From Octopus bimaculoides (taxonomy: Eukaryota): a stretch of 42,927 nucleotides of DNA. The position numbers and the translations under genes were made by a program. Shown in pieces: positions 15,339-41,884 of this stretch; positions within the stretch are counted from its first letter, which is position 1; the number at the start of each line of letters is the position of its first letter. The stretch spans positions 15,238,085-15,281,011 of the forward strand of contig NC_068998.1 in NCBI RefSeq assembly GCF_001194135.2. Direction: 5' to 3'. Under the pieces are notes generated by a model, which did not search any database, was not told the DNA's origin, and was given only the letters and a program-made list of their open reading frames with translations.

Positions 15339-16128
15339 TATATATATATATATATATATATATAGGGCTGAAGACTAGCCACACATTTGAAACTTGAGTA
15401 CCAAGGGGTTTGAATCAAACTGTTTTGATCTATACATGTAACTCCCAATGAATGTGTTGAGTGCCCTTCTTTCGTTTATCTACTCACTCGTGTATATACA
15501 TATANNNNNNNNNNNNNNNNNNNNNNNNNNNNNNNNNNNNNNNNNNNNNNNNNNNNNNNNNNNNNNNNNNNNNNNNNNNNNNNNNNNNNNNNNNNNNNNN
15601 NNNNNNNNNNNNNNNNNNNNNNNNNNNNNNNNNNNNNNNNNNNNNNNNNNNNNNNNNNNNNNNNNNNNNNNNNNNNNNNNNNNNNNNNNNNNNNNNNNNN
15701 NNNNNNNNNNNNNNNNNNNNNNNNNNNNNNNNNNNNNNNNNNNNNNNNNNNNNNNNNNNNNNNNNNNNNNNNNNNNNNNNNNNNNNNNNNNNNNNNNNNN
15801 NNNNNNNNNNNNNNNNNNNNNNNNNNNNNNNNNNNNNNNNNNNNNNNNNNNNNNNNNNNNNNNNNNNNNNNNNNNNNNNNNNNNNNNNNNNNNNNNNNNN
15901 NNNNNNNNNNNNNNNNNNNNNNNNNNNNNNNNNNNNNNNNNNNNNNNNNNNNNNNNNNNNNNNNNNNNNNNNNNNNNNNNNNNNNNNNNNNNNNNNNNNN
16001 NNNNNNNNNNNNNNNNNNNNNNNNNNNNNNNNNNNNNNNNNNNNNATATATATATATATATATATATACTCAAACACACACATGCATGTATGTATATATA
16101 CGCATGTGTGCATGTGTGTGTGTGTATG

Positions 16129-16432: not shown

Positions 16433-16646
16433 GCCGAGATCATCATTAGTTTCTTCAGAGACTATACTTTGCAGAGAAAATTGTAAAAGCTGAAGAAACA
16501 GATAAACAGTAAGCTTTAGTCACAGTTTCTCCAACAAAATCTTTTTCACCCATGGAAAAATAAACATAAATCAGGTAAAAAAAAATAAAAAGCAAAATAA
16601 AAAAAATTGAAGATTTTCTTTTTGAATAAAATAGTTAAAGACTTAC

Positions 16647-16729
16647 CCACAAATATAAGCAAATATCTTCATTGTATCCAGTCGACGGCCACAAGATGAA
16701 ATTTCTGTATAGCAATGCCGATAGACAAT
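16647..16729 (-). CDS. Coding exon of an uncharacterised RUN-PDZ-PTB family (LOC417372-like) protein, PTB core
   Basis: Acceptor ctatatttcag and donor gg|gtaagt; 83 nt, phase 0 to 2. It encodes IVYRHCYTEISSCGRRLDTMKIFAYICG, matching the recalled CDD PTB_LOC417372 consensus FKHSFPEISSCGRRVDDPNYFAYIAG. Confidence 0.9.
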
Positions 16730-16794
16730 CTGAAATATAGTATAACATAAACTCTTCAGCTATTAATTTCAAATAAATACTGAGGCATGGTTAG

Positions 16795-16944
16795 GTGGAG
16801 GCATGGCTGTGCAGTTGAGAAACTTGCTTCCCAACTACATGGTTCTGAGTTCAGTCCCACTGTATGATACCTTGGGCAAGTGTCTGCCTTGAGTGTTGAT
16901 TTGAGACATGAAAACTAAAAGAAGCCTGTTGTGTGTGTGTGTGC
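16795..16944 (+). mobile_element. SINE family A 5' half
   Basis: Head plus CORE-like segment, interrupted at (GT)n by a family C copy. Confidence 0.75.
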
Positions 16945-17160
16945 AGAAACGTTAGCACGCCGGACGAAATGCTTAGCGGTATTTCGTCTGCGCTACGTTC
17001 TGAGTTCAAATTCCGCCGAGGTCGACTTTGCCTTTCATCCTTTCGGGGTCGATTAAATAAGTACCAGTTACGCACTGGGGTCGGTATTATCGACTTAATC
17101 CGTTTGTCTGTCCTTGTTTGTCCCCTCTGTGTGTAGCCCCTTGTGGGTAGTAAAGAAATA
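16945..17160 (+). mobile_element. SINE family C, young copy
   Basis: gcagaaacgttagcacgccggacgaaatgcttagcggtatttcgtc...gtaaagaaata; it retains many CpGs. Confidence 0.9.
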
Positions 17161-17169
17161 ACACACAAA

Positions 17170-17395
17170 ATATTTATCCTTCCTATTATAGGCACAAGGA
17201 CTGAAATTTTGGGGAAGGGAATAAGTCGATAATACTGACCCCAGTACTCAGCTGGTACTTATTTTATTGAGACGAAAGGATGAAAGGCAACGTCTGATCA
17301 GAATTTGAACTCAGAACACGAAGACAAATGAAATACTGCTGAGCATTGTGCCCAGCATGCTAATGATTCTGCCATCTCACCACCTTTCTGGACCA
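17170..17395 (-). mobile_element. SINE family C, diverged
   Basis: Reverse complement of the family C head and core, with the 3' variant seen at 11100-11160. Confidence 0.8.
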
Positions 17396-17547
17396 TTGAT
17401 ATATTACAATGAAAATTGAAGATATTTTTGAAAATTAGGGTATTTAAAGATTCATCTGACGCTTCAACACCAACCCCACAGTCCCTTTGTCCCTAATACT
17501 CATGTACTTTATGTTAAAGCCCTAATAATGATAATAATAATAATAAT

Positions 17548-17777
17548 AATTTATTTCTATATTTCTCACAGGGGGCTAAACATAGTGGGGACAAACAAGG
17601 ACAGACAAGGGGATTAAGTCGATCACATCAACCCCAGTGATTAACCGGTACTTATTAATCGACCCCAAAAGGATGAAAGGCAAAGTCGACCTTGGCGGAA
17701 TTTGAACTCAGAACGTAACAGCAGATGAAATACCGCGAGGCATTTCGCCCAGCATGCTAACGATTCTGCCAGCTCAG
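17548..17777 (-). mobile_element. SINE family C with (taa)n tail
   Basis: Reverse complement of 16945-17160. Confidence 0.88.
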
Positions 17778-17782
17778 GCTGA

Positions 17783-18045
17783 TTAAAGCCTTGTCACTGG
17801 ATTTAGTAGATGGAGACTGAAAGAAGCCCATCTTATGTGTGTGTGTGTGTCTTTGTGTTTGTGTTTGAAACCCCCATCACCACTTGACACTCAATGTCGG
17901 TGTGTTTACATCCCCGTAACTTAGCGTACTAGGCTTAAAAAATTAAGTCCTGAGAGTCGACCCGTTCAACTAAAAACCCTTTAAGGCAGTGCTCCATCAT
18001 GGCCGCAGTCAAATGACTAAAACAAGTAAAAGAATAAAAGAATAC
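17783..18045 (+). mobile_element. SINE family A 3' part
   Basis: aaagccttg...gcagtcaaatgactaaaacaagtaaaagaataaaag. Confidence 0.8.
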
Positions 18046-18099
18046 AAATTATATCAGACATACAACTTGTAAAACACATTCAAATTTAAAACAGACAAA

Positions 18100-18474
18100 A
18101 ACATCATAAGCACACAAGTTACACACATACTACAACATGCCAATTGCACACATACACACACATTGCAAACTACACACACACATTGCAAACTACACACACA
18201 CATTGCAAACTACACACACACAAACTACACAAACATAAAAACTCCACACACAAACACGTCACCACTTGTACAACTACTGCTACTACAAATACAAAATTTA
18301 TGCACAAATGCACACCACAAACACACATACACCACAAACACACACACACACCATAAATACAAAAACCGTACACACACGAACACACCCTCGTACCACTATT
18401 AATACAAAAACTACAGACACATACACAAACAAATTTCATACACATGCCACAAACACTAACAATAGATATAAACT

Positions 18475-18520
<46 letters not shown>

Positions 18521-18815
18521 GCAAAAAAAACTGCACACAAATACACAACATTATCCCTACAACTACAAAAACTACACAGACACACAAACATGCACACGAC
18601 ACGACACACACATACACCACAAATACATACACTCCACACACAACTACTACAAACACAAAAGCTACACACACATACAGTCATACATACAAACACAAACACA
18701 GCCACATACATATACACACAAACACACACAAACAGGCACAGACTCACACAAACACATTCAGACACAGAGAAACACAGAACCTCCTCCCTGGATACAGACA
18801 CACATTAATAAACAA
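18100..18815. repeat. Cryptic (CA)-rich low-complexity tract including a 20-bp unit repeated three times
   Basis: cacacacattgcaaactaca repeats at about 18153-18215 inside a roughly 700-nt degenerate CA tract. Confidence 0.85.
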
Positions 18816-18989
18816 CACTAAGATAGTTAAGCAGCCAAAACGTCTGATGCTTTGTTTACAAACAGTAAAAATAACATTTAACCTTGAAACAACATAAAAA
18901 GAAAGAATATCCAACATATCCGAAAAGGAAGTTAAAATCCTTCAATTCCACAACATTCAACAACAGCTACAATTCCAAGTATGAGCCAG

Positions 18990-19305
18990 TGAGGGAACAT
19001 TGGTGGTTGGTGGTGGTCAACTGACGTGCATGAAATAGCAGCCAAGTTTTCCTTCACCCCCACCTCATGGCTTTCTAAAAGGAAAATGCAGGAAAAGCTG
19101 CTTGATGCTGTATGATGGGATGCTCGTGGCTGGGACCATTTTGACCAAAATGATTTTGGCATTAGGAAGAGTATCCAACCTTAGAAACCATGCCAAAACA
19201 GACTATGGAGCCTGGTGCTGACCCTGGCCTTGCCAGTTCCCATCAAACTGTCCAACCCATGCTGGTATGGAAAACGAACATTAAATGATGATGATGATGA
19301 TGATA
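18990..19305 (+). mobile_element. SINE family D
   Basis: Ends aacccatgctggtatggaaaacgaacattaaatgatgatgat. Confidence 0.75.
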
Positions 19306-19437
19306 ACAGCCCAAATTTAAAGAAACCAGATGATTCCAATAGACGGGATTCCACCATTTAGTTGGAAGAAGAAAACAGGAAGAGATAAAAATAAAGTAAA
19401 CAAAATAAGATTACAATTTCCAACCACATTAGAGTGT

Positions 19438-19690
19438 ATCGTCATTGTTGTTTTAATGTCCACTTTACCATGCTTGTATGGATTGGGTGGACTTTACTGA
19501 GGCAGATTTTCTATAGCTGAATATCCTTCTTGTTGCCAACCCTCACCTGAGTCAAATCAAGGTAATATTTTCCTATAACTATACATATTTTTCACATGAC
19601 TGGAAAGGAATAATCTCATTGCATGACAATGATGCTCATTTACAAACATCATGCGACATCTAGAGAAGTGTACACACAAACACACATACA
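19438..19690 (-). mobile_element. SINE family D-related fragment
   Basis: ttttaatgtccactttaccatgcttg...gttgccaaccctcacctg; similar to 9372-9485. Confidence 0.6.
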
Positions 19691-19704
19691 TATAATATAT
19701 ATAT

Positions 19705-19899
19705 ATGATGGATTCTCTTGTCATGAACGACAAATGTGGGTTCAGTAAAATAAAGCATTAATCATGTTCTTCGGACACGAAAATGTCTCTTGAGGTCTGC
19801 TGATGCCTTGCAAACCTTTTGGTAAATGGAACAAGTTGAGGACTCAGTTTGCTTGAGTGCTTGTGGATCATTCACTGTATGTTTTCTTGAGTGGACAGC
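19705..19899 (-). mobile_element. LINE (RTE-like) 3' end with a decayed C2H2 finger
   Basis: TCSIYQKVCKASADLKRHFRVRRT* resembles CxxCxKxCxSxxGLxxHxRxH; a short UTR follows, ending in ccatcat(at)n. Confidence 0.5.
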
Positions 19900-20171
19900 A
19901 TATATATATATATATGTATATATATATAAAACAAATAATAAATTAGTATATGCATATATACGTACAGGTATGTGCATACCTACGTCTACCTGTATATATA
20001 GGTGCATATCTGGGTACAGGACATTGCAAACAAAACGTAGACAAAAAAATAATAATAAGCAGAGTACAGAACACACACAGGCCACATAGAGAACATTTTC
20101 CTTCATCAGCTACCCCCATTCTAACACAGGCGTTTCGAAGAGTAGTGTGTGTGTGTATATATGTAAGTATA

Positions 20172-20345
20172 TACACACACACAATGGGTTTCTTTCAGTT
20201 TCCATCTATCAAATCCTTTTGCAAGGCTCTGCTCGGACCGGAGCTATAGCAGAAAGCATTTTCCTTAGGCACAACGCTGTGGGACTGGACCCAAGACCAA
20301 ATCATTGGGAAGCAAGTATCTTAACCACACAGTCACACTTGTGCC
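20172..20345 (-). mobile_element. SINE family A 5' half
   Basis: ttctttcagtttccatctatcaaatcc...cttaaccacacagtcac. Confidence 0.75.
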
Positions 20346-21046
20346 TGTTTACAATATTTGCACCTACACTATGTTTCAATCAATCTCAACACTGACAGTC
20401 ACCAGATGTCTTATTCTTGAATGGAACTTGGTTCCAGAATGGATTCAAACCAGATAATTTCATTTTAAATCAAGAATAGTAATTTCCTATACTTTTCCGA
20501 CATTTGCTTAGAAAGAAAGGTTCTTAGTTCTTGATTAAGATTGCTATTGTTATAATTTTGCTTGGTACTGTTTGGGTCTTAATTTATATACTGTCATGTT
20601 TTTTCTAAGGTGAAACATTGAATTCATTGAGAACTATTTTACAGCAAGTCATGCAAATGTTTTATAGCTTCAACTAACAAAAATGGCAAATACGTTACTC
20701 AAAAGACTGGCAAAGGAGATACACTGAAAAAGTCATTCCACCTTGTGGGAGTTCATTCTTGCAGATGGCAATCTTGATCCAAACCAGTCTGAATAGGAAG
20801 ATGATTCAAAGGCCCAGAACACCAATCATTTCCACTACTATGCCATATTTTCTAGCATGCAAGTTAAATTTTTTAGATCAAAATTTATGGCCCAAAAAAA
20901 GGTAGGTTTATTTATACACCAAAACAACTTTAAAGAACCAAAAATTCCGTGTGAAATGTGGCATGATTTGGAAAGATAGTGACAACAATTGAATGTTTAC
21001 ATGACACGTTTACATTATATACCATGTTGACTTGTATACTGGAAAA

Positions 21047-21268
21047 TACAAGGGGGTGCTGGAAAGTTCCTGGCTTTAAGGGTATCATGAAAGGCCTGGA
21101 TGGAAGCCCAACCTTCCAAGTTCTTTTACAGAGTTTAAAAAAACTGAAGGACCACTGCAATAACTGTATGAATCTGAGAGGGGAATATGCTGAATAAAAT
21201 CATAATTAACTGATTCTCCTGTGTTTTCTTTTATCTGAAACCAGGAACTTTTCAACACCCACCTCACA
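21047..21268 (+). mobile_element. Internally deleted mariner element
   Basis: Left TIR tacaagggggtgctggaaagttcctggct and imperfect right TIR accaggaacttttcaacacccacctcaca. It retains a transposase C-terminus LQSLKKLKDHCNNCMNLRGEYAE* (cf. mariner GIxKLxxRWxKCIxxxGEYVE*). Confidence 0.8.
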
Positions 21269-21269
21269 T

Positions 21270-21570
21270 GATAAAGACCCCCTTTGGTCAAGAATGGCCA
21301 TAGGATTGCACCTAGGAAGTTGCTCTCCAAGGCACAAGTCCAGGCAAGGTTGCTTATGGAAGACCAGCAGTTGCCCATACATACCAGCCTCCCTTCTCCA
21401 CAATACTGATGTTGGCAAAGGCCAAATACAGCTTGGCACCAGTGGTGTTGCAACTCATTTCTACAGCTGAGTGAACTGGAGCAACGTGATATAAAGTTTC
21501 TTGCTCAAGAACACAGCACACAGCTTGGTCCAGGAATCAAACTCACTACCACATGATTGTGAGCCCATTA
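21270..21570 (-). mobile_element. SINE family E-related
   Basis: ctcagctgagtgaactggagcaacgtg...cttgctcaagaacac...ggaatcaaactcac is the reverse complement of the family E head region. Confidence 0.7.
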
Positions 21571-22617
21571 AAAACAGAAAAAAATAATTCCTATCAAAGA
21601 GCAGCTAGAACTAAATACCCATCCAGTAATAAGAAACCTGATGACAAGTAGAGATAAAACTACTTAAAATATAATGTAATTTTAAACATTTTGAGTATAC
21701 ACTATAAAAATGTAGTCAATAGTTCAGAAAATTATTGTCTCGTAAACAACAACTTATATCAGACATTTTGAGAAACAAAAAAATAACTTTTACAAATTTT
21801 GATTAGAAAAAAAAAGATTAAACCAATCACCATAGGAATTAAAGTATAACAAAGAAATCCTTATTCATACAATGATATTTTTGTAGTCAAGAAGTTTTGT
21901 AGATAATCTATTACTTTCTTTCTTTCACCTTTTTTTTAGAGTAGGTTTTTGTGATATTTATTAACTACAGTTTAATAACTTAAGTAGTGGCGCATGACAC
22001 ATAATAACATAATTTAGTAACTTAAGAAGTGTCTACTATAAAAATCATTTGATTATTCCTAATATATACCATACCAGGAATAATTATGGATGTGCTAAAT
22101 CATGTGGTTAGAAAAAAGGATTCATAACTAACATTGTTCCTTGGCTGAGAATGCAAGGGAGACAACCCTATGTGTTTCTGCTTAATTAAGTTTCATCATT
22201 AGTGGTTATAGCCTTCACCATTACTTCATAGAACTGTAACAACCAGCTTGCTGTATAGAATGTTCAAGGAAAACAGGCAAGTAGTGCCAGGAGATGAGAT
22301 TGATAATTTAATTTTTAAAGGTTATTATAATATATTTAAGTAATATGAGGCTTGTCTAAAATTAAAGCAAACTTTTTAAAAAGCAAATTTGATGCTTTAT
22401 CTACAATTTAATCAGATTTGTCTCCTTAAAACAGTTTCCTCCCCACCAAAACACTACTTCAAATGACATATCACTCTATCAAACATTGAAGGCTTAGAGT
22501 TGTTAGCCAGATCACTAAGATTTCATTTGTCTATATCACAAACAGGCCAGTGATAGAAGGCAGAAACTAAACTCAGAACACAAAGAATCAGAACAGATAT
22601 CACAAAGCATCTATTCC

Positions 22618-22735
22618 AATGCCTTGGTCGGCCCGAGGCTATAGTAGAAGATACTTGCCCAAGGTACAACACAGTGAAACTGAACCTGGAACCATGAGGT
22701 TCGTAAGCAAGCTACTTATCACACAGCCATAAGTA
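22618..22735 (-). mobile_element. SINE family A 5' fragment
   Basis: ttggtcggcccgaggctatagtagaagatacttgcccaagg...cttatcacacagcc. Confidence 0.8.
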
Positions 22736-23257
22736 AAAAAAAATTTTTAATAGAAAAAAAAAAAAGACAACAGGTGGCCCATGCAATTGGTAAATGATAT
22801 CCAAAAGATTGGAAAAGGCCACTCAAAAGGTCTCCATCATGAAGAGAATGAAGAGAAGATGATTTAGTTAATTGATATTGGCCTAGACAGGAAAAAAAAA
22901 GGTACATTCAAGAAAGAATTAGAAGTATTTTGACCAGCAATGTCTAACAATCACTAATAGTCTGGTTCATGCAGTGATACGTGATGTCATTAATGTTCTT
23001 GTGAAACATGAATGTCACATTATCTCATCTCACTATCATTTCCTTTAGTTAATCATAAAACTTGTGTCTATATGAAAAAACAAAAAATCAGTATTTCATA
23101 ACGAGAAATTAGGCAGAAATGATAGAATCATGAAGTAAATAAATATCAAATTTCAAAAGGAAAAAAGACCCCAATTCCTTCTGAATTGTATTAATCTATA
23201 GGGAAAGATGCTCATCTTCAATTTTAACAGTGCTATGTAGAGGAAAAATAAATCTTC

Positions 23258-23405
23258 GTGGTAAGTAGCTTGCTTACCAACCACATGGTTCTGGGTTCAG
23301 TCCCACTGCGTGGCACCTTGGGCAAGTGTCTTCTACTATAGCCTCGGGCCGACCAAAGCCGTGTGAGTGGATTTGGTAGACGGAAACTGAAAGAAGCCTG
23401 TCGTA

Positions 23406-23438
<33 letters not shown>

Positions 23439-23684
23439 NNNNNNNNNNNNNNTATATATATGTATGTGTTTGTTTGTCTGTGTTTGTCCCCCCAACATCG
23501 CTTGACAACCGATGCTGGTGTGTTTACGTCCCCGTAACTTAGCGGTTCGGCAAAAGAGATCGATAGAATAAGTACTAGGCTTCCAAAGAATAAGTCCTGG
23601 GGTCGATTTGCTCGACTAAAGGCGGTGCTCCAGCATGGCCGCAGTCAAATGACTGAAACAAGTAAAAGAGTAAAGAGTAAAAGA
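23258..23684 (+). mobile_element. SINE family A, young near-complete copy
   Basis: Full architecture: tRNA-like head, CORE-like segment, internal (TA/GT)n, ggggtcgat segment and (agagtaa)n tail. Confidence 0.92.
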
Positions 23685-24527
23685 GAGAGAGCCTATCTTA
23701 GGTAAATTTTCCTCAGAGAAGGAGTTGAACTTGGCACTACAATTAGTTCATTAGTTTTACACCTATTTTCCATGCTACCATAGATTAGTTGGAAAGATAT
23801 TGAACTCTTTTACAGCTGTATACCTTTCCTGTCACTAACCTTTATCAAATTTTTTAGGCAATGACTTTTAACCCCAATTATTTTCAAAGGCACAGAAAAG
23901 AACTCCTTAATTTGTTGGTGGATATGGAGTCTGCTTTATGATCATGTGGTCTTCAGTTCTAATCTTGCGGTGAATGGTCATGGTTGGAGCACCTTAAATC
24001 TTTAATCTTTTAGGTAAAATCAGACCCAAGGTTAAACAACAATACAACATTAACTGTTATAGCAATGATCTAAAAATGTAATTTCTATGCTGTAGACGAC
24101 ATGCTAGAAATAGCAGCCACATTTCAAAGAAATAAAGATCATATCATCCTAAAAATGGAGACACTGAATAAATAATGTTGCACTCAATGTCTGGAAAAGA
24201 AGAGATGAGATTGTCACAGTTAAAAAAATCTTTGATGACTGGTTTGGCAGATCTGGATTGACCTGGGTGAAACACTCTCAATGATGAAAGTGCAAAAACA
24301 AAAGCTTAGCTGATGTAGTTATAACATGAAACTAAAATATACAAAGCAAAACAAAAAAGAAAATGATTTCCAGAAAATTTCCAATGACCTGTTCTATTGT
24401 CGCACCTACTACTGGACCAGTGAATTATTGAAGAACATAAATGATAGTCTTGTTGGGAGTAATAGACAAGACATTCAGTCTAAAGTGTAAAAGTTGCCTA
24501 CTGAGAAATAATTAAATGACTACTCAC

Positions 24528-24587
24528 TTGTTTTTTGTCTCGTGTCATCACAAGTACTTCAGTCTCGCCAAGTTGCAGCAAGAATGG
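24528..24587 (-). CDS. Coding exon of the same RUN-PDZ-PTB family gene, PTB first half
   Basis: Acceptor ttatcacttccag and donor caa|gtgagt; 60 nt, phase 0 to 0. It encodes PFLLQLGETEVLVMTRDKKQ, aligns to the recalled consensus EVLLELGEIGVTVWDKSTSE and joins the 16729 exon in frame with no gap. Confidence 0.85.
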
Positions 24588-24762
24588 CTGGAAGTGATAA
24601 GTAAATTCATGGATGTAACTTTTTATTTCTTTCATTGTCTTCCCTTCTTCTCTCTCACTCTCTCCATAGATATATCTCAAATACATACAGACACACACAC
24701 GTATAACTACATATAAATATATATATATATATATATACACAGACACACACTCACATACATAC

Positions 24763-24817
<55 letters not shown>

Positions 24818-25431
24818 NNNNNNNNNNNNNNNNNNNNNNNNNNNNNNNNNNNNNNNNNNNNNNNNNNNNNNNNNNNNNNNNNNNNNNNNNNNNNNNNNNN
24901 NNNNNNNNNNNNNNNNNNNNNNNNNNNNNNNNNNNNNNNNNNNNNNNNNNNNNNNNNNNNNNNNNNNNNNNNNNNNNNNNNNNNNNNNNNNNNNNNNNNN
25001 NNNNNNNNNNNNNNNNNNNNNNNNNNNNNNNNNNNNNNNNNNNNNNNNNNNNNNNNNNNNNNNNNNNNNNNNNNNNNNNNNNNNNNNNNNNNNNNNNNNN
25101 NNNNNNNNNNNNNNNNNNNNNNNNNNNNNNNNNNNNNNNNNNNNNNNNNNNNNNNNNNNNNNNNNNNNNNNNNNNNNNNNNNNNNNNNNNNNNNNNNNNN
25201 NNNNNNNNNNNNNNNNNNNNNNNNNNNNNNNNNNNNNNNNNNNNNNNNNNNNNNNNNNNNNNNNNNNNNNNNNNNNNNNNNNNNNNNNNNNNNNNNNNNN
25301 NNNNNNNNNNNNNNNNNNNNNNNNNNNNNNNNNNNNNNNNNNNNNNNNNNNNNNNNNNNNNNNNNNNNNNNNNNNNNNNNNNNNNNNNNNNNNNNNNNNN
25401 NNNNNNNNNNNNNATATATATATATATATAT

Positions 25432-25747
25432 ATTCTTTTATTGGTTTCAGTCATTTGACTGTGGCCATGATGGAGCACCACCTTGAGTCAAACAAATCAA
25501 CCCCAGGACTTATTCTTTGTAAGCCTAGTACTTATTCTATCATTCTCTTTTGCTGAACCGCTTGGTTATGGAGACATAAACACACCAACATTGGTTATCA
25601 AGCAATGGTGGAGGGACAAACAGACATACAAACATTGGCCCGAAGCTATACCAGAAGACACTTGCCCAAAGTGCCACGCAGTGGGACTGAACCCAGAACC
25701 ATGTGGTTGGTAAGCAAGATACATACCACACAGCCACTCCTGCACCT
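25432..25747 (-). mobile_element. SINE family A, internally deleted
   Basis: Tail and head are present; the central microsatellite segment is shortened. Confidence 0.8.
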
Positions 25748-26269
25748 ATATATATGCATGTGTATATATATATATATATATNNNNNNNNNNNNNNNNNNN
25801 NNNNNNNNNNNNNNNNNNNNNNNNNNNNNNNNNNNNNNNNNNNNAAAGAGAGAGGCAGGCAGACTGATAGATATAAATATATATTTGTGTGTATGTGTGT
25901 GTGTATCCATTTCTCTTTTTGAAGCAGAAACAATGGCCTGATCATTCGAAAAATTGAAAGAAAAAAGAAAAAGATTTTTCTCAAAATGTATTTTATTGCA
26001 ATTTTAAGTCTACCACCTAATATATTTTAACAATACTCTACAAAGCAGACAAAACAAAACAGGTGATAAAACAAACAAGAAAAATGAAAATGGCAATGAC
26101 AGTGATGATAAAAAATATTACAAATGATGAATGTAAATGCATTGAAATTATTTTAATTAATGAGCTCTTTACAAAGCAGAAAGTCTTGAGAAAAATGGTG
26201 AGCAAGGGGGAAGAGTGGGCTCAACAATCTGTCAATGATAAATTTGCTTCGTTTTAATTCATATTTTTT

Positions 26270-27056
26270 TTTACTTAAGTTATTGGACTGTGGCCATACT
26301 GGAGTACCACCTTGTAGAGTTTAGTGAAACAAATTAATCATTTGGTACTCATACTATTAGTTGTTTTTGACCAAATCACTAAGTTACAGGGACATAAACA
26401 AACCACCACGGGTTGTCAAGCAGTGGAGGGACAAGCACAAACACAGACACATGCATATACATATAGATACATTACACATATGAGGGGCATCTACACATAG
26501 AAATCATGTCAAAACAGACAATTGGAGTCTGGTGTGGGGCTCTCCAGCTTGCCAGTTCCTGTCAAACCATGCCAGGCATGGAAAACAGATATTAGATGAT
26601 GATGATGACGATGATGATGATGACGATGATGATGATGACGATGATGATGATGACGATGATGATGATGACGATGATGATGATGACGATGATGATGATGACG
26701 ATGATGATNNNNNNNNNNNNNNNNNNNNNNNNNNNNNNNNNNNNNNNNNNNNNNNNNNNGATGACGATGATGATGATGACGATGATGATGATGACGATGA
26801 TGATGATGACGATGATGATGATGACGATGATGATGATGACGATGATGATGATGACGATGATGATGATGACGATGATGATGATGACGATGCATGCAGGCAT
26901 GCAACAAGCTTCCACTCAGTTTCTGTCTACCAAATTCACTCACAAGGAATTAATTGGCCTGGAGTTATACAGCAGAAGCCACTTGCCCATTGTGCTGTAA
27001 GATTGAAACTGAAACCACATGTTTGCAAGGAGGGCTTCTTAGCCACGCAGCCATGT
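26270..27056 (-). mobile_element. SINE family A split by a plus-strand family D tail and a GAT array
   Basis: The A 3' half is at 26270-26480 and the A 5' half at 26900-27056; the D tail (26503-26594) and the array lie between them. Confidence 0.7.
26595..26887. repeat. (GATGATGATGATGAC)n 15-bp higher-order microsatellite
   Basis: A GAC occurs every fifth triplet on both sides of a 50-N gap. Confidence 0.95.
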
Positions 27057-27221
27057 CTAAATCATTGAGTTGTTAAGCATGTTAATACCATAGATTGATC
27101 AACAAGGATTTGGTTACTCATATGGTTGTCCAGAATTATGGGTAATCCAGATTTTGTCAAGCTTATGTCAGAATCGCATTCTCAAACTGAATCCACTTAT
27201 CCATACCAATGCTATTAATCT

Positions 27222-27592
27222 TTTATCTTCTATTTGTTTCAGTCATGTGACTGTAGCCATGCTTGGACACCACCTTGAAGCATTTTAGTCAAACAAATTG
27301 GCCCCAGTACATATTTTTCTTTAAAGCCTAGTACTTATTCTATAGATCTCTTTTGACAAACCACTAAGTTATGAGGATGCAAACATACCAACACTGGTTG
27401 TCAAGTGATGGAGAGGAAGAAGCACACACACACATGAGCTTCTTTCAGTTTCCGTCAACCAGTCTACCAGCTCCATTCACAAGGCTTTGGTCAGCTCTAG
27501 GCTATAGTAGAAGACACTTGCCCAGGGTGTGATGCAGTGGGACTGAACCCAAAACCATGTGGCTGGCAAGAAAACTTCTTACCACACAGCCT
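27222..27592 (-). mobile_element. SINE family A
   Basis: Full reverse-complement copy, diverged. Confidence 0.85.
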
Positions 27593-27661
27593 ATATATAA
27601 TTTCTAAAACAGAAGACATGATCTTTTTTTATAGCAAAACATCTTTGCTGAGAAGTTTATT

Positions 27662-28192
27662 TTTATGTCCATTTTTTCCCATGCTGCAATTGGTTAGAGG
27701 AATATGTATTATTGCTGCACCTCTTATGTGTCCATAGCTTTCACTGGGTACACTGTATGGAGTTTCTACCAATACCTTTTCTACATATCAAGCAGGGCCA
27801 TCGCCTTGAAGGGATCAATAATTTGTCTGTTTTCCTACTAACTTTGGTATTTGCTAAATTAACTCTAAGGCTGTTGGATTCCAGACCTTGCTTTCACACC
27901 CGAAACTTTTTCTGTAGTTCTGGTAGGGATTAAGAAAAAAAAAACATCAACATAGAGGAGCTCCCAAAGACCGCCAGTTTTAAATTCATCTGTTATGGTC
28001 TAGGGGACTATGGAAAAACAAGAGGGGACTGAGATCTGATCTTTGGTGAACTCCTACTTATACACTAAATTCCATGCCATACTCATTGCCAACTTTCACC
28101 TTCCTGACAGCATTTCTCTACATGGCTTGTACAGCTCTCACTAACCCCTCATCTATCCCCAACTTCCTCATAAGGGAGCATAAGACCCTGTC
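27662..28192 (-). mobile_element. RTE-type LINE RT fragment with a Cys-rich insertion and an attached 3' tail
   Basis: MRKLGIDEGLVRAVQAM...VGVHQRSDLSPLLF...ELLYVD...KQGLESNSLRVNLANTKV...WPCLICRKGIGRNSIQCTQ*KLWTHKRCSN, then the tail gcagcatgggaaaaaatggacataaaa. Confidence 0.88.
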
Positions 28193-29529
28193 AAATATTT
28201 TTTGATTGAAAATTCAAACAAGTTTGAAAAGAATAAGTGAAAATGCAGAGGTTATAGAAGTTAATGGTAACGAAGGCTGTGGAATGATAAAGAACGTTAC
28301 AACATTCATTTAAAAAAACACGTTAGAGTTTGTGTATGTGCGTGAAACAAGTAAAAGTATAATATTAAAACAAAATATTTTTCAAATACCTCTTAAAATC
28401 ACTGGATATAATATATATATATATGTATAATATATAATAATTCCAGATTGCAGAATAGATTTGAAAATCTAATCCATTTCCCCTTTGGAATTTTTGGCAC
28501 CGAAATTGGGTAAATAATGTGTTTCATTATCTATCTATCTATCTATCTAATTTCTTTCTTTCTGTCTGTCTGTCTGTCTGTCTGTCTTGCTGCTTCTTTT
28601 TATCTGTCACTCTTTCAAACATTTATATTTCCACACATTTTTTTTTTTTGTCTCTTTCAAACAGTCTCACTTTCTTACATTTGCAATAATTTCTTCGTTA
28701 CAAATATACTTTCTTCTAAACATTCTTCCCTCTTTTATTATCATCAAGCATTCTTTCACAAATTCTTCACTTCTTTCTTTCTTGCAAACATCTTTTTTTT
28801 TTTTTTTGTCTTTCAGTCATCATTTGATCGTCTGCTTTTTATTTCTTTTCCAAATAATTCTTTCTTTCTTTCTTTTAATCATTCTCTTCTTATTTTCTTC
28901 TTTTCTTTCTTCCAGTCATTATACCCTCCCACCATCTCTGTGTATTTTCCTCTTTTTTTTTTTAATATAATTCTCCTCTTTTCCATGTTGGAACTCTACC
29001 ACACTACTTCCCTGTACCCACACAACATTTTTTCAAAACACCACACTGTCTGCATAACATAACAAGGGATATATTTTCATCTGTTATTACATAAAACAAA
29101 AGTTTCCTTTGGAGATTTTTAACAATATACTAACTGCAACGACATATATCACTGCTTGTTTTCTCTCATACAAATTTTTGAAAATAAATAGTGTGTGGAG
29201 TGGGGGAGTTCTCCTGTAAATAATGATAACAATCAGTGTGTAAACTTACAAAAATGTTGCCAGTCCACTAACAACAACAACAACAACGATTTCTTTTATG
29301 GCCACAAAGACAATGAATGGAGACGATAATAACCGGTATTTTGGGTGACAGATATTAATCATAAGAAAAAAATTATAAAAAAACTTCTCAGGAAAAATAA
29401 CCATAATTCAGGAAAAAATTATAAAAATACTAAAAACATACTAGTTTTTAAAAAAGAAAGAAAAGCTAAAGAGAGATAAAGAAATTAACTGTAGGTGCAA
29501 TTTATTTTATAATAGTATTATTTTGTTGA

Positions 29530-29720
29530 GCTGGCATTAATACAGTGCTGGATTGGCAGATCAGTAAATCATTGAACAAAATAACAAAATTAGTTCTACC
29601 CGCTTATATTGTGAGTTCAAATCCTGCCAAAGTCAACTTTGCCTTTCGTTATACCAGGATCAATGAAATAAAAGAAATCAATCTACAAGTACCAGAGTTG
29701 ATTTAATCAACTGATGCTGA
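29530..29720 (+). mobile_element. SINE family C, diverged
   Basis: gagttcaaatcctgccaaagtcaactttgcctttc. Confidence 0.6.
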
Positions 29721-29761
29721 TGTCACACTATAGGGTTGTTCAAGCAATGAGACTAGAGCTG

Positions 29762-30006
29762 AAAAACCTCAATGTTTTTAAGTAAAGAAGAATATATTTG
29801 ATACTATAGTCCTTAGTTTCCCTAAAATGATGTGGTCATGATTGGAATGCTTTTGATCATATGTTTGTTTGATCAAAATTAACCTAAGGTTAAACAACAA
29901 CATTTGCTAATGATCTGATATAGAAGTTGGTAAATTACAGCCTATGGCCTCATTTCTTCTGGTTTGCCAACTTTATTGAAATAGGTGACATTACATACAG
30001 AAATCT
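29762..30006. repeat. Family F copy, left arm of an inverted pair
   Basis: Its reverse complement aligns with 31314-31557 over about 245 bp. Confidence 0.8.
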
Positions 30007-30134
30007 TTGTCATGCATGAAGGGGTGGATGAACAAATAAACTCCCAAATGTCTTCTTAGTATTCTTGTGAACAGTAACAATCTCAGATATTATTAGGTTT
30101 GAAGGAGAACAATGAAACAATGTCACATAAATAC

Positions 30135-30212
30135 TATCATCAATGACATATCTAGCTTGTCCATCATATTCAGTGTGAGGCGACAGAAGATGATGTTTGT
30201 GTCGCACATCCT
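30135..30212 (-). CDS. Candidate upstream exon (unverified)
   Basis: Acceptor caatttgttttag; open frame EDVRHKHHLLSPHTEYDGQARYVIDD. The donor is ambiguous (gtattt giving exon end 30135, or gtgaca giving 30127). Similarity to the PTB N-terminus is weak. Confidence 0.35.
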
Positions 30213-30249
30213 CTAAAACAAATTGCATTCTGTCACAAGAAATCATTTA

Positions 30250-30680
30250 TTATGAGCTGTAAGAAGAGATGGGAAGACATAAGATGAAGTACTGAAAGCT
30301 AACCTCAAAATGCTGAACTTTATGAAGGAGATAACAGAGTACTGAGATATATGGTACATTGCTGTATTTGAGAAGACCCACCCACCACAACAGAATTAAG
30401 ATCCTAAAACCAAGGTGCCACATAAAAAGCATTGGTATGGGTGCTGATGCCACACAAAAAGCACTGGTGCCATGTAGAAAGCACTAGTAATGGTACCACA
30501 TAAAAAGTACCCAGTACATTCTGTGAAGTGGTTGGTGTTAGGAAGGGCATCCAGCCATAGAAACCAAGCCAAAACAAACTATGGAATCTAGTGTAGCCCT
30601 TGGCCTTACTAGTTCCTGTCAAGCAATCCAACCCATGCCAGCATAAAAAACAGACATTAAATGGTGTTCTTGATGATGAT
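30250..30680 (+). mobile_element. SINE family D, long copy
   Basis: Colinear with 989-1270 and ends in a (gat)n tail. Confidence 0.8.
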
Positions 30681-31031
30681 GAATGTATAGTAGTTTGATC
30701 ATCCATTTCTCTTTATTTCGGGTCAAAGATCCATATACTTTCTTGGAAGTGAGCTGAATTGGAAATAATTTTATGACTCATAATAATTTTATGAAGTAAA
30801 TAAAAGAGGAAACCACCATTATATAAGGCTGATAGAAACAGCTTGTTTTCTTTTCACATTTTCTTTTTATAAATATTACCTGCATAATGAAAGATTCGCT
30901 GTATACTTAAAATATGAAAATCAGTGTGTGTTTTGTGAAACATAGAATGCAGTGAAGAGTTAAAACATTTATAGTTAGGCTGAATAGGAATGATTGTGGC
31001 TTCAGGGTAAGTGAAATACCAGCCACTTTAC

Positions 31032-31079
31032 CTGCTTTCCTCAACAGATAAGAAGCACTTTTTATCACTACCTGCTTTC
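31032..31079 (-). CDS. Candidate 48-nt exon (unverified)
   Basis: Acceptor ttattgattatag and donor cag|gtaaag; two frames are open (KQVVIKSASYLLRKA or KAGSDKKCFLSVEES). Confidence 0.3.
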
Positions 31080-31313
31080 CTATAATCAATAACTCATGCA
31101 AATTTAATGTAACAACATATAGATGTTCTTAGTCATTGCTACTCTACTCATTTAGGAAGGTAGAAACATTTACTGCTTAAATTATTGCACCTTGGGAAAT
31201 GTTTATTTTGTTTCTTTGTGCTAATATAAAAATAAAGATTTCAGACAATAAAAAACTGAAATTTCTGTTCTATCTTTTGATACAGAACTTTATTGTTTGC
31301 AAACCAAAGAAAA

Positions 31314-31557
31314 GATTTTTGTATGTAATGTCACCTATTTCAATAAAGTTGGTGAGCCAGATGGAATGAGACCACAGGCTGTAATTTGCCAACTTCTGTC
31401 TCAAATCATTAACAAATGTTGTTGCTTAGCCCCAAGTCAATTTTGATTAAGCAAACATATGATCAAAAGCATTCCAGCCATGACCCCTTCTTTTTAGGGA
31501 AAATGTGGACTACATTTATCAAATGTGTTCTTCTTTACTTAAAAACATTGAGGTTTG
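31314..31557. repeat. Family F copy, right arm of an inverted pair
   Basis: Reverse complement of 29762-30006. Confidence 0.8.
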
Positions 31558-31756
31558 CCTTTCTTGGAGATTTTGCTGCTATTTCTAGTAGCTTAAGTGA
31601 CCATACAGAGGAGGTATGTGCAACATTTTTCACAAGGTGGCTGCATAAAACACAGCGCACCATCAGGCAGGCCACGCTACTAAATCTATTCAAGGTAATT
31701 TTTTGTTAGGTATGTCACTCAAAAATTCCCATGGGCTTAATTGGGTACGTGGTTTC

Positions 31757-31800
<44 letters not shown>

Positions 31801-31802
<2 letters not shown>

Positions 31803-31995
31803 GGCAGTGAGCTGGCAGAATCATTTGCATACCAGCCAAAATGCTTAGCTGCATTTTGTCCGTCTTTACATTTCTGAGTTCAAATTCCACTGAGGATGAC
31901 TTTCATCCTTTCAGGGTTGGTAAAATAAGTACCAGTTGAACACTGGGATTGATGTAATCGACTTGAACCCTCCCCCGAAATTGTTGGAGAAAGGT
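31801..31995 (+). mobile_element. SINE family C inserted after (TTA)n
   Basis: atggcagtgagctggcagaatc...ctttcatcctttcagggttggtaaaataagtaccag. Confidence 0.85.
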
Positions 31996-32220
31996 ATGAA
32001 ACCTAAGGATGGTAAAAAAAAATCTTAAATGATAAAAACAAAAAAACAAAGCGGAAGCAAAAAAAAATAAAAGGGAAAATGTATGAGTTGAAACTAACAC
32101 CTGGAATGTTACTTAACAGCCAAGAGTCCATGTTTGTCTAAATTTATGAGTGTCAAATTTTGGCACAAAGCCAGCAGTTTTAGGGGAGAGAGTAAGTTGA
32201 TGAAATTGACTTTAGTGTGC

Positions 32221-32293
32221 AGCAGCAGCAGCAGAAGAAGAAGAAGAAGAAGAAGAAGAAGAAGAAGAAGAAGAAGAAGAAGAAGAAGAAGAA
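32221..32293. repeat. (AGC)n(AGA)n microsatellite
   Basis: Direct reading. Confidence 0.95.
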
Positions 32294-32320
32294 CTGTGGT
32301 ATTGCAAAAATCAGATTTAC

Positions 32321-32419
32321 CTGGAACTGAATCCATATTGCATAAAGTACTGTCCATCTGAGGTCCTTGTTGTGACTTGACAGACAGTACAAATCTCCGG
32401 TACATACAATATCTTAAAT
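32321..32419 (-). CDS. Candidate 99-nt exon (unverified)
   Basis: Acceptor gttgtatgtag and donor cag|gtaaat; non-repetitive; two frames are open (LRYCMYRRFVLSVKSQQGPQMDSTLCNMDSVP or FKILYVPEICTVCQVTTRTSDGQYFMQYGFSS). Confidence 0.4.
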
Positions 32420-34227
32420 CTACATACAACATCACAATATTGGGTACTGTGTGACATCTTACATCATAATAATAATGATAATAATAATAATCATAATAAT
32501 AATAACAGAACAGGACACTGAGGATGGTTAACAAGAGAGCAAGGTGCTTTATGCTACTTTACTGCGATCTGGAAAATATCCATTAATATCAAGCAAATAA
32601 CAATAAAGAAAAGTTTTTTAAAATAATGAAATTGCTAAAGGATACTTATGTGAGCACTACATTAAAATATTAGTGATGTTGTATTACTTTTTGCCTAATA
32701 TAAGTAATGGATTGTCAATGTTCAATCTAATGGTCAATTAGCCAGCATGTGTAAGCAGCACACTAATGGAGCACACAAGTCAAACCACCACCAGACAAGT
32801 TCACCCACTTCCGAAAATGAGAAACAGCACAAATGAAAACCATAAAATTTGGCCTGAGGCCGAAGGGGAATACATACTTTGAATCTGATGCATAACAAGT
32901 ATGGAAAATGGAGTGTACAAAATGAAAAATGACACATGGTCAGATACCTAAAAACCAGTACTGAATCTAAATAAAGAACCACATTTTATTTAGTGAATAT
33001 TGCAAATAATACAAAAAAGATATAAATGGACACAAGAGAAATATGTTTCTCTGATACATGAATATTTTACAGATAGGCTTTATTCAAAAAGAAAGATGAG
33101 ACTACTGTAATATTTAAATTAGAATACCTGGAAAGAAAAGACCTTGGTCTGAAAGTAGTTTTAGATGCCAAGAGTTAAGCTAAATTAAGAATCTACAATT
33201 TCAAGACCAAAAAAAAATATCAAATAGAAATAAAACACCTAAAAGAAAATAAACTGTGACAAAAACACAAACCAAAAAAAAAATGTAAACAGTGAAAATC
33301 AAAGCATTTAAGCTAAAAAAAAAAAAAGGTGAAAATATAATCCACAGAGAATAGGCTTTACAGGTGCAAAAAAAAAAAAAAATGAATGAGAAAATACAAG
33401 AAAATTAAACCTTGGTACACTTACAAAATACTACGCATCAGCAGTCTAGCCAGAACAATGGAAACATGAATAAATTGAAATACAAGAAAAGTTCAGGAAT
33501 AGAAAATTCTAATGAAGAAAATTCCGAATAACAGTCTAAAGATGGAAAAAGAGAAAAAAGAATTAAACTTAACAGATCTTTCTAAAGTCCAATAAAAGAC
33601 ACTATTGATGAAAAACTTTAATTCTTTGTAACCATATCTCTAAAGATTTACAATGTTTTGATTACTTTTGAAAATAATCAAGAATTTAGAATGATTAAGT
33701 GAAACTGGCTTTTCATTAAGACAGTCTGGGTTTTGGAACATAATAAAAACAGCACATAAAATTATTAAAGGTTTCAGTTTTTTAACGAGAGATTTTATAT
33801 CATGTACCAGAGACTGTCTTAGATTGGTATTGAAAGGGTTGATTAAATAGCTACAACTATAAAAAGAACTCATAAACCAGGCCATTGTAGACTTAATGGA
33901 TACACTTGTGAATATCATACAATGAAATAACAGCAATAAAAAAATCACGACCCACGCTTTCAAATTAAAAACGCTCATGAATATCATACAATGGAAATAT
34001 AGGTGTATATATAAAACCCCGAGTAAACAATTTGGAAAGCAGACATACACTAAAAGATATAAAATAAATGAAAATATCTCAAACTTTAATTAAATTGTAT
34101 GAATCTTTCCTGATGAACTGCATTTCATATGCATATACTTAATCAACATGACGAGTAGAACATGCACTGTTTTTCAAGAGCATTAGTGTAACATTCTAAA
34201 ACTTGTCACATTGATCAAGTATGTTTT

Positions 34228-34700: not shown

Positions 34701-34750
34701 TATTATCATCACATATATATACATATACATATATATATATATATATTTTT

Positions 34751-34850
34751 ATATATAATGTTGACCACTAAAGTGGACATTTAATGTGCTAGAAATAGAC
34801 CACATGTTCTAGCACATTAAATGTCCACTTTAGTGGTCAACGTTATATAT
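34751..34850. mobile_element. 100-bp palindromic MITE-like hairpin
   Basis: 44-bp arms with a single mismatch (34759/34842), a 12-nt loop, and an (AT)n context. Confidence 0.85.
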
Positions 34851-34964
34851 AAACATATACTTTAATCCCCTGAGATTGCAGATATTTTTTCTGAATCTCT
34901 CTGATTCTTTAAATGTGCTAGCTTCCTGGTAATAAATCGATATTAATTAATATCNNNNNNNNNN

Positions 34965-35026
<62 letters not shown>

Positions 35027-35870: not shown

Positions 35871-35902
35871 AGTAACAAGGTACCAAGGTATATTGTTCAT
35901 TC

Positions 35903-38960: not shown

Positions 38961-38999
38961 AGAGACCTAAATCTAAGTGAGACCTAAATCTAAGGCCTC

Positions 39000-41880: not shown

Positions 41881-41884
41881 TAGG

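What the first reader, a model, noticed from the sequence alone, without database searches (positions are those of the whole stretch)
16647..24587. Unannotated exons of an uncharacterised RUN-PDZ-PTB family gene
Neither exon is called as a gene in the ORF track: one is absent and the other is buried in a gap-spanning ORF. Both have strong splice sites and join across a 7.8-kb intron to give PFLLQLGETEVLVMTRDKKQIVYRHCYTEISSCGRRLDTMKIFAYICG. The EISSCGRR...FAYI motif is what I recall as diagnostic of CDD PTB_LOC417372, a family with RUN, PDZ and PTB domains and no known function. That domain combination suggests an adaptor linking small GTPases or motors to receptor tails, but this is inference. 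It is the most substantial unexplored protein here.
Basis: partly seen in the sequence, partly recalled or inferred. Interest (0 to 1): 0.7.

Follow-up and report, generated by a model that had tools for sequence, protein, structure and literature searches.

The report
Two known octopus PTB-domain exons
The two segments are real coding exons (16 and 17) of an already annotated Octopus bimaculoides gene for an uncharacterised RUN-PDZ-PTB adaptor protein; the only new point is that the public gene models stop too early, because the last three small exons are missing from this stretch of the assembly.

Summary
Window 24587..24528 (60 nt) and 16729..16647 (83 nt), minus strand, are exons with canonical AG/GT sites. 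They join in frame across a 7,798-nt intron to give the quoted peptide. The window is 100% identical to Octopus bimaculoides chromosome CM046618.1.

The 14-N gap at 23439-23452 lies inside that intron, in the (TA)n/(TG)n core of one SINE-like repeat. Both flanks are collinear, so it does not affect the frame.

"Unannotated" is wrong against public annotation. RefSeq XP_052830320.1 (LOC106869617, 416 aa) and UniProt A0A0L8IAY2 both end with exactly these 48 residues.

The family call is right:
- Relatives across Bilateria are about 445 aa with RUN, weak PDZ and Dab/Numb-type PTB domains, and all examined are unnamed or auto-named.
- Among the 120 best hits to a frog member there were fish, amphibians, reptiles and birds but no mammal.
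- The ISSCGRR motif is the predicted beta5 strand, which is the peptide-binding strand in solved PTB complexes.

Both O. bimaculoides models are 3'-truncated. Their stop is the TAA of exon 17's donor (GG|GTAAGT). O. sinensis/vulgaris and Argonauta orthologues carry 41 more residues (last strand plus C-terminal helix), on three tiny exons in Argonauta. None of these is in the window's sequenced letters.

Verdict: already known, ordinary, low interest.

The parts
24528..24587 (-). Coding exon 16 (60 nt, phase 0/0) of O. bimaculoides LOC106869617. It encodes PFLLQLGETEVLVMTRDKKQ, which is PTB strands beta2-beta3 in the model.
   Evidence: sequence, AG/GT. (exact threading of XP_052830320.1; the Argonauta exon 16 is also 60 nt). 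(strands 368-374 and 378-383).
16730..24527 (-). Intron 16, 7,798 nt as assembled (2,951 nt in Argonauta). It is filled with SINE-like repeats and microsatellites.
23439..23452 (.). 14-N assembly gap inside intron 16, in the internal (TA)n/(TG)n of one SINE-like copy. The flanks are collinear.
   Evidence: (families D7, D10, D11).
16647..16729 (-). Coding exon 17 (83 nt, ends in phase 2). It encodes IVYRHCYTEISSCGRRLDTMKIFAYIC and the first two bases of a Gly codon. In the model this is PTB strands beta4, beta5 (ISSCGRR) and beta6.
   Evidence: (Argonauta exon 17 is also 83 nt with the same GG|GTAAGT donor).
16643..16646 (-). GTAA of exon 17's splice donor. Both public O. bimaculoides models read through it (GGG TAA) and take the TAA as their stop codon. 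This is most likely an artefactual CDS end.
   Evidence: (gene end L001 98291 = window 16643). One search found no AATAAA/ATTAAA in the sequenced bases from this donor down to window 15400, on either side of the gap.
15505..16045 (.). 541-N gap lying 0.6-1.1 kb downstream of exon 17. It is a candidate hiding place for exon 18 (67 nt), because the Argonauta intron 17 is only 532 nt. Unproven.
24588..42927 (-). 3' part of intron 15 (22,510 nt in all). Exon 15 lies outside the window, at window-equivalent 47098-47166. This stretch contains the 596-N gap 24818-25413 and a decayed reverse-transcriptase fragment.

Best explanation
The two segments are coding exons 16 and 17 of the Octopus bimaculoides gene LOC106869617, transcribed from the window's minus strand.

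The gene encodes a cytoplasmic adaptor of about 457 aa. It has an N-terminal RUN domain, a central PDZ-like domain, an acidic disordered linker and a C-terminal Dab/Numb-type PTB domain. Only exons 16 and 17 lie in the window; exons 1-15 are upstream of it.

The two exons encode five core strands of the PTB domain. One is the family's most conserved element, ISSCGRR, which is the predicted beta5 strand. In solved PTB complexes beta5 pairs with the NPx[YF] peptide ligand.

Shown here: exon identity, boundaries, splicing frame, purifying selection, orthology, domain architecture and fold.

Inferred from the known behaviour of the three domain types:
- The RUN domain docks on a small GTPase of the Arl/Rab/Rap type.
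- The PTB binds an NPx[YF]-type tail without needing phosphotyrosine.
- The PDZ binds a C-terminal peptide.
- Together these would link membrane cargo or receptor tails to GTPase-marked endolysosomal membranes.

The public O. bimaculoides protein models are truncated. They end at a stop created by reading into exon 17's donor. The real protein almost certainly continues for 41 residues (beta7 and the C-terminal helix). Those residues are encoded by three small exons that are not in the sequenced letters of this window.

The confidence figure applies to the identity of the exons and the gene. The adaptor mechanism itself is less certain, at about 0.3-0.4.
For: Identity and annotation:
- The window is 100% identical to GCA_001194135.2 CM046618.1.
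- XP_052830320.1 and A0A0L8IAY2 end with the exact 48 residues.

Conservation:
- Argonauta hians has the same exon lengths for exons 1-17, apart from linker exon 13, followed by exons of 67, 25 and 35 nt.
- Codon differences in exons 16+17 are 20 synonymous to 4 non-synonymous.
- A 2,751-nt Logan contig (SRR6517992; it clusters at 90% with an Acanthosepion/Sepia pharaonis protein) has an uninterrupted 468-aa CDS running across the positions of the 16|17|18 junctions, so it is probably a transcript.

Architecture:
- Pfam finds RUN at 1e-12 to 1e-20 in eight of the nine relatives (1e-08 in the ninth), PID up to 1e-08 in eight, and a weak PDZ in three.
- The family profile hits FYCO1, PLEKHM1 and RUFY3 RUN domains, ZO-1, GIPC and Dvl PDZ domains, and ANKS1B, ARH, GULP1 and Numb PTB domains, in that order along the protein.
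- The AlphaFold model has pLDDT 87.5.
- Foldseek best matches are the AIDA-1 and APPL1 PTB domains (TM 0.81) and the SKIP and PLEKHM1 RUN domains solved in complex with Arl8b.

Truncation:
- P0135 (O. sinensis/vulgaris, 457 aa) equals the 416-aa model plus 41 aa.
- The missing part is strand 426-433 plus helix 436-456.
- No polyadenylation hexamer follows exon 17.
Against: - No O. bimaculoides RNA data could be examined. Splicing in this species rests on public gene models whose evidence I could not inspect, plus orthologues.
- Exons 18-20 were not found anywhere in the window. Their existence in O. bimaculoides is inferred from relatives.
- PDZ hits are below Pfam's cut-off in single sequences.
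- No ligand or GTPase partner is known for any member, and no paper mentions the family's locus names. The mechanism is inference from domain types.
Confidence: 0.92

Rival explanations
1. The annotated stop is genuine. O. bimaculoides would make a protein ending ...FAYICG, with exon 17 as a terminal exon through intron retention or intronic polyadenylation. That would give a RUN-PDZ protein with an incomplete PTB domain.
For: Two independent annotation efforts give the same C-terminus. No downstream exon is found in the sequenced parts of the 16.6 kb downstream.
Against: - Both models rest on the same gap-rich assembly sequence: the window is 100% identical to the record that carries the RefSeq model and has 11 gaps.
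- The stop is simply the TAA of a consensus GTAAGT donor in phase 2. The same donor in Argonauta is spliced onward to exon 18.
- No AATAAA/ATTAAA lies in the sequenced bases from the donor down to window 15400, on either side of the gap.
- The truncated product lacks beta7 and the C-terminal helix that close the PTB fold.
- O. sinensis/vulgaris, at 98% identity, carry the 41 residues.
Confidence: 0.06
2. The two segments are a dead gene fragment or pseudogene remnant rather than part of a working gene.
For: Only two exons lie in a repeat-rich 43-kb window, and the expected downstream exons are absent.
Against: - All 17 exons are collinear, open and bounded by GT-AG over 88 kb.
- Codon differences versus Argonauta are 20 synonymous to 4 non-synonymous.
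- The splice sites are intact.
Confidence: 0.02
3. The ORF pieces and splice-like sites are chance matches in AT-rich DNA.
For: Short open stretches flanked by AG and GT are common at 35% GC. Pfam PID on the peptide alone is below the cut-off.
Against: E=1.4e-21 to the Argonauta orthologue, 100% identity to annotated proteins, and conserved exon boundaries.
Confidence: 0

Closest known systems
Octopus bimaculoides LOC106869617 (RefSeq XP_052830320.1, 416 aa) and UniProt A0A0L8IAY2 (172 aa, 'PID domain-containing protein')
   Same: It is the same gene.
   Different: The models add GTAA of the donor as 'G-stop' and lack the last 41 residues. The 2015 annotation split the gene into a RUN model (A0A0L8HNA4, 257 aa) and a PID model.
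Octopus sinensis XP_029646086.1 = O. vulgaris CAI9736122.1 (457 aa); Argonauta hians GAB1605907.1 (468 aa)
   Same: These are orthologues, 98% and 92% identical in the 48 residues. Argonauta has identical exon 16 and 17 lengths and phases.
   Different: They are complete: they carry ETTCSIAQNFKCHIFEAESIDD|AKIILCAIG|QGFHRTTFYV. The CDS spans 185-188 kb in O. sinensis/vulgaris and 48 kb in Argonauta, against 88 kb up to exon 17 here.
RUN-PDZ-PTB family
   Same: Same length (about 430-470 aa), same RUN / PDZ-like / PTB order, and same HSYTEISSCGRRxD...FAYIAGETTC signature.
   Different: Nothing differs in kind; this is the cephalopod orthologue. The CDD model itself could not be run. Chicken LOC417372 was not seen by name, only other bird orthologues.
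Dab/Numb-type PTB domains: ANKS1B/AIDA-1, APPL1, Numb, ARH (LDLRAP1), GULP1, Mint/X11, Fe65, ICAP1
   Same: Same fold (Foldseek TM up to 0.81; profile E down to 1e-12). Exon 17 encodes the strand equivalent to the ligand-pairing beta5.
   Different: Only 9-21% identity. Different partner domains. The ligand is unknown.
RUN domains of FYCO1, PLEKHM1, PLEKHM2/SKIP, RUFY3/RPIPx; RUFY4 (the name some annotations give)
   Same: The N-terminal domain matches these RUN domains (E 5.5e-19 to FYCO1; Foldseek hits to the Arl8b-bound SKIP and PLEKHM1 RUN domains).
   Different: No FYVE hit appears in the Pfam scan, and the model shows PDZ and PTB folds where RUFY4, from general knowledge, has a coiled coil and FYVE domain. 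'RUN and FYVE domain-containing 4-like' is therefore a misnomer. The RUN domain lies outside this window.

Membership tests
RUN-PDZ-PTB family (PTB_LOC417372 / si:ch211-250n8.1 / LOC106869617) | The peptide's significant matches are to this family and not to other PTB families. | tested here: met
   only 20 proteins at E<=0.001 among 1.84 billion. Nine were fetched and scanned: all nine have RUN and eight also PID. Two of the 20 (P0015 and P0020, odd match patterns) were not examined.
RUN-PDZ-PTB family (PTB_LOC417372 / si:ch211-250n8.1 / LOC106869617) | N-terminal RUN domain in the same gene. | tested here: met
   XP_052830320.1 carries PF02759. Exons 1-15 are collinear upstream of the window. 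Profile hit to the FYCO1 RUN domain at 5.5e-19.
RUN-PDZ-PTB family (PTB_LOC417372 / si:ch211-250n8.1 / LOC106869617) | Central PDZ domain. | tested here: met
   Family profile positions 181-262 hit ZO-1, InaD-like, LNX, GIPC and Dvl PDZ domains at E 7e-5 to 1e-2. Precomputed PF00595, PF17820 or PF13180 hits in several members. Single-sequence Pfam scores are below the cut-off, so the support is moderate.
RUN-PDZ-PTB family (PTB_LOC417372 / si:ch211-250n8.1 / LOC106869617) | Signature EISSCGRR ... FAYI(A/C)G in the PTB domain. | tested here: met
   consensus HSYTEISSCGRRxDxxxYFAYIAG. G402 is invariant; S399, C401 and R403 are at least 90% conserved over 70 sequences. The window encodes TEISSCGRRLDTMKIFAYICG.
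RUN-PDZ-PTB family (PTB_LOC417372 / si:ch211-250n8.1 / LOC106869617) | Complete PTB domain (last beta strand plus C-terminal helix) encoded at this locus. | tested here: inconclusive
   Present in the O. sinensis/vulgaris and Argonauta orthologues. The three exons are not found in the window's sequenced letters. Six gaps lie downstream of exon 17, and the window ends 16.6 kb downstream.
RUN-PDZ-PTB family (PTB_LOC417372 / si:ch211-250n8.1 / LOC106869617) | A hit to the CDD model PTB_LOC417372 itself, and chicken LOC417372 as a member. | not testable with these tools
   No CDD library is available. 'LOC417372' occurs in no held paper. Bird orthologues were found, but the chicken entry was not among the 120 listed.
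Pfam PID / PTB (PF00640), Dab/Numb-like class | Score above the Pfam gathering cut-off and a PTB fold. | tested here: met
   The 48 aa alone score 17.8 bits, below 20.9. Eight of the nine scanned relatives give PID hits of 20.6 to 35.5 bits, seven of them above the cut-off. Foldseek TM 0.81 to the AIDA-1 and APPL1 PTB domains.
RUFY4 (RUN and FYVE domain-containing 4) | C-terminal FYVE zinc finger, with a coiled coil after the RUN domain. | tested here: not met
   No FYVE hit in any of the nine family proteins at E<=0.01. The model shows PDZ and PTB folds in that position.

The most novel reading that the evidence does not exclude
The family to which these exons belong may be a bilaterian-wide adaptor that was probably lost in mammals. 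It would couple an Arl8/Rab/Rap-type GTPase on endolysosomal membranes (through RUN) to NPx[YF]-bearing receptor tails (through the ISSCGRR beta5 groove of the PTB) and to C-terminal PDZ ligands. That would be a new cargo-to-organelle link, and cephalopod neurons with their very long introns and heavy editing might diversify it. None of this is specific to the window, and none of it is excluded by the evidence.
Probability: 0.25. Interest if true: 0.45.

Novelty: already known. Interest (0 to 1): 0.12.

Why it matters
It matters little as a discovery. The exons are already in RefSeq and UniProt, and the family is already catalogued as having no assigned function.

Two modest practical points come out of it:
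- The O. bimaculoides models XP_052830320.1 and A0A0L8IAY2 are 3'-truncated by an assembly problem. They should not be used as a full-length PTB domain, for example in domain censuses or editing-site catalogues.
- The 'RUFY4-like' names given to the O. vulgaris and Argonauta orthologues are misleading.

The family is conserved from nematodes to birds. No mammal was among the 120 best hits to a frog member, and its locus names appear in no paper in the held library. It is a reasonable target for someone studying RUN or PTB adaptors.

Tried and rejected
- The word-indexed protein search with the 48-aa peptide found nothing, although exact matches exist in that collection.
- Pfam on concatenated minus-strand ORF fragments from 11.7 to 32.9 kb found no further PTB, PDZ or RUN pieces.
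- A PDB sequence search with the peptide alone gave only a chance hit to UBR1.
- Searches for the missing exons all found only exons 16 and 17 plus dispersed repeats. These were tblastn with all homologues, a family HMM against every stop-to-stop fragment of 8 aa or more on both strands, PAM30 short-query tblastn and motif scans for the ETTC..., AKIILCAIG and QGFHRT exons, and sensitive blastn of the Argonauta gene tail.
- O. sinensis and O. vulgaris DNA could not be fetched because the gene range exceeds 100 kb. The size of intron 17 in Octopus remains unknown.
- Paper searches for LOC417372, ch211-250n8.1 and RUN+PDZ+PTB found nothing on the family.
- Considered and rejected: chance ORFs, a pseudogene, and a genuine stop after exon 17 (see rival explanations).
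- Recoding by RNA editing could not be addressed.

Full report
**1. Observation**

On the minus strand, 24587..24528 reads cttccag|CCATTC...AAACAA|gtgagt (60 nt). On the same strand, 16729..16647 reads tatttcag|ATTGTC...TTGTGG|gtaagt (83 nt). Exon A is open only in the stated frame (read from the sequence). Joined at a phase-0 junction, the two give PFLLQLGETEVLVMTRDKKQ|IVYRHCYTEISSCGRRLDTMKIFAYIC plus two bases of a Gly codon. The intron is 7,798 nt as assembled.

Exon A sits inside a meaningless 327-aa ORF (24498..25481) that runs through the 596-N gap 24818-25413. Exon B's frame is a 38-codon stop-to-stop stretch and is not in the 40-aa ORF list.

**2. The flagged gap**

The 14 Ns at 23439-23452 lie inside the intron, 1,076 nt below exon A's donor. 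They sit in a (TA)n/(TG)n run. The DNA on both sides forms the two halves of a single SINE-like repeat. It aligns collinearly with another copy at 17685-18055, and the gap falls where that copy has its short internal microsatellite. The flanks are therefore continuous. Only the intron length is uncertain, and frame is not an issue.

**3. Source and annotation**

The window is 100% identical to Octopus bimaculoides GCA_001194135.2, chromosome CM046618.1, in reverse orientation.

An exhaustive HMMER search with the 48 residues gave 20 hits. The best was an Argonauta hians protein at 92% identity, E=1.4e-21. Searching with that protein returned:
- O. bimaculoides XP_052830320.1 (LOC106869617, 416 aa).
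- UniProt A0A0L8IAY2 (172 aa, 'PID domain-containing protein'), through its cluster.
- O. sinensis XP_029646086.1, identical to O. vulgaris CAI9736122.1 (457 aa), through the same cluster.

Both O. bimaculoides models end with exactly the 48-residue peptide. The exons are therefore not unannotated.

Exact threading of XP_052830320.1 on the locus gives 17 GT-AG coding exons. Exon 16 is window 24587..24528 and exon 17 is 16729..16643. Exon 15 lies 22.5 kb upstream, outside the window.

**4. Conservation**

Argonauta has 20 coding exons. Exons 1-17 have the same lengths as in octopus, apart from linker exon 13, and exon 17 has the same GG|GTAAGT donor. Exons of 67, 25 and 35 nt follow.

In exons 16+17, 24 codons differ between the two species: 20 synonymously and 4 conservatively. 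Apart from dispersed repeats, these two exons are the only DNA shared between the window and the tail of the Argonauta gene.

A 2,751-nt Logan contig (SRR6517992) clusters at 90% with an Acanthosepion/Sepia pharaonis protein. It carries an uninterrupted 468-aa CDS running across the positions of the 16|17|18 junctions. It is therefore probably a transcript and gives RNA-level support from a relative.

**5. A truncated model**

The annotated CDS ends at window 16643. That is GGG TAA, read straight through the donor GG|GTAAGT. The O. sinensis/vulgaris and Argonauta proteins continue with 41 residues, ETTCSIAQNFKCHIFEAESIDD AKIILCAIG QGFHRTTFYV. In the AlphaFold model (pLDDT 87.5) these form the last beta strand (426-433) and the C-terminal helix (436-456) of the PTB domain.

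No AATAAA or ATTAAA lies in the sequenced bases from exon 17's donor down to window 15400, on either side of the gap.

None of the three exons is detectable in the window's sequenced letters. There are two possible locations:
- **In a gap.** The 541-N gap at 15505-16045 begins 0.6 kb downstream, and the Argonauta intron 17 is 532 nt.
- **Beyond the window's start.** The O. sinensis/vulgaris CDS spans 185-188 kb, against 88 kb up to exon 17 here. Octopus intron 15 is ten times the size of the Argonauta one.

I cannot decide between these. A genuinely truncated protein is unlikely; I put it at about 6%.

**6. What the protein is**

Nine relatives were scanned against Pfam. All nine show an N-terminal RUN domain, eight also a C-terminal PID hit, and three a weak PDZ hit.

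A 70-sequence family profile hits solved structures in three blocks along the protein:
- RUN domains at positions 8-176: FYCO1 (5.5e-19), PLEKHM1, RUFY3/RPIPx and PLEKHM2.
- PDZ domains at 181-262: ZO-1, GIPC and Dvl.
- PTB domains at 303-442: ANKS1B (1e-12), ARH, GULP1 and Numb.

Foldseek agrees. The best PTB matches are AIDA-1 and APPL1 (TM 0.81). The RUN matches include the SKIP and PLEKHM1 domains solved in complex with Arl8b.

Exon 16 encodes strands 368-374 and 378-383. Exon 17 encodes strands 389-394, 398-404 and 407-416. Strand 398-404 is ISSCGRR, the best-conserved stretch of the domain. G402 is invariant, and S399, C401 and R403 are at least 90% conserved. By its position in the fold it is beta5, the strand that pairs with NPx[YF] peptides in solved PTB complexes. 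That last point is established knowledge applied by inference.

**7. Mechanism**

The likely mechanism follows from the domain types and was not tested. The protein would be a three-handed adaptor:
- RUN docks on a GTP-bound Arl, Rab or Rap protein.
- The Dab/Numb-type PTB binds an NPx[YF] tail, and possibly phosphoinositides, without phosphotyrosine.
- The PDZ binds a C-terminal motif.

**8. Distribution and literature**

Members occur in molluscs, annelids, nemerteans, brachiopods, hemichordates, echinoderms, amphioxus, arthropods and nematodes. Among vertebrates they occur in fish (si:ch211-250n8.1), amphibians, reptiles and birds. No mammal is among the 120 best hits to a frog member.

All examined members are 'uncharacterized', or are mis-named 'RUN and FYVE domain-containing 4-like' although no FYVE domain is detected. 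No held paper mentions the locus names.

**9. Verdict**

The family assignment is right. The claim that the exons are unannotated is wrong. This is an already known gene of an already catalogued family with no assigned function. The only added value is a curation point: the O. bimaculoides models lack the last 41 residues because of the assembly. Interest is low.

Noticed in passing
window 40238-40753 (-), with further open pieces at 39926-40186 and 39559-39804 (-): A decayed non-LTR-type reverse-transcriptase fragment (Pfam RVT_1, E=1e-14) lies inside the 22.5-kb intron 15, in the same orientation as the gene.
   Followed up: partly
window 23255-23690, 17685-18055, 16818-16940, and inverted copies at 20156-20323 and 22621-22722: There are several copies of a SINE-like repeat with an internal (TA)n/(TG)n microsatellite. 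The four gaps inspected (15505-16045, 23439-23452, 24818-25413 and 25782-25844) are bordered by (TA)n-type microsatellite sequence, so these gaps are likely collapsed simple repeats.
   Followed up: partly
L001 67837-90346 vs L002 48716-50983; window 16730-24527 vs L002 51044-53994: Introns are far larger in O. bimaculoides than in Argonauta hians at identical positions. Intron 15 is 22,510 vs 2,268 nt and intron 16 is 7,798 vs 2,951 nt. The exon lengths are identical apart from linker exon 13 (221 vs 254 nt).
   Followed up: yes
window 14963-15255 (-): Two overlapping open stretches are rich in Cys, His and Pro. One contains ...CPSLYIDQMGRCLADG..., which is faintly reminiscent of a GIY-YIG/Penelope-type element. 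Pfam gives only a sub-threshold IBR_1 hit (E=0.034). It is probably a decayed transposon piece just below the 15505-16045 gap.
   Followed up: partly
proteins P0135 and P0001 (O. vulgaris CAI9736122.1, Argonauta GAB1605907.1): Public names say 'RUN and FYVE domain-containing 4-like', but no FYVE domain is detectable. The architecture is RUN-PDZ-PTB, so the name is an annotation carry-over from RUN-domain similarity.
   Followed up: yes
window ~32230-32293: A trinucleotide microsatellite reads as poly-Leu, poly-Asn or poly-Phe in different frames. It matches a similar repeat in the Argonauta locus (L002 56419-56443). It is simple sequence of no evident significance.
   Followed up: no
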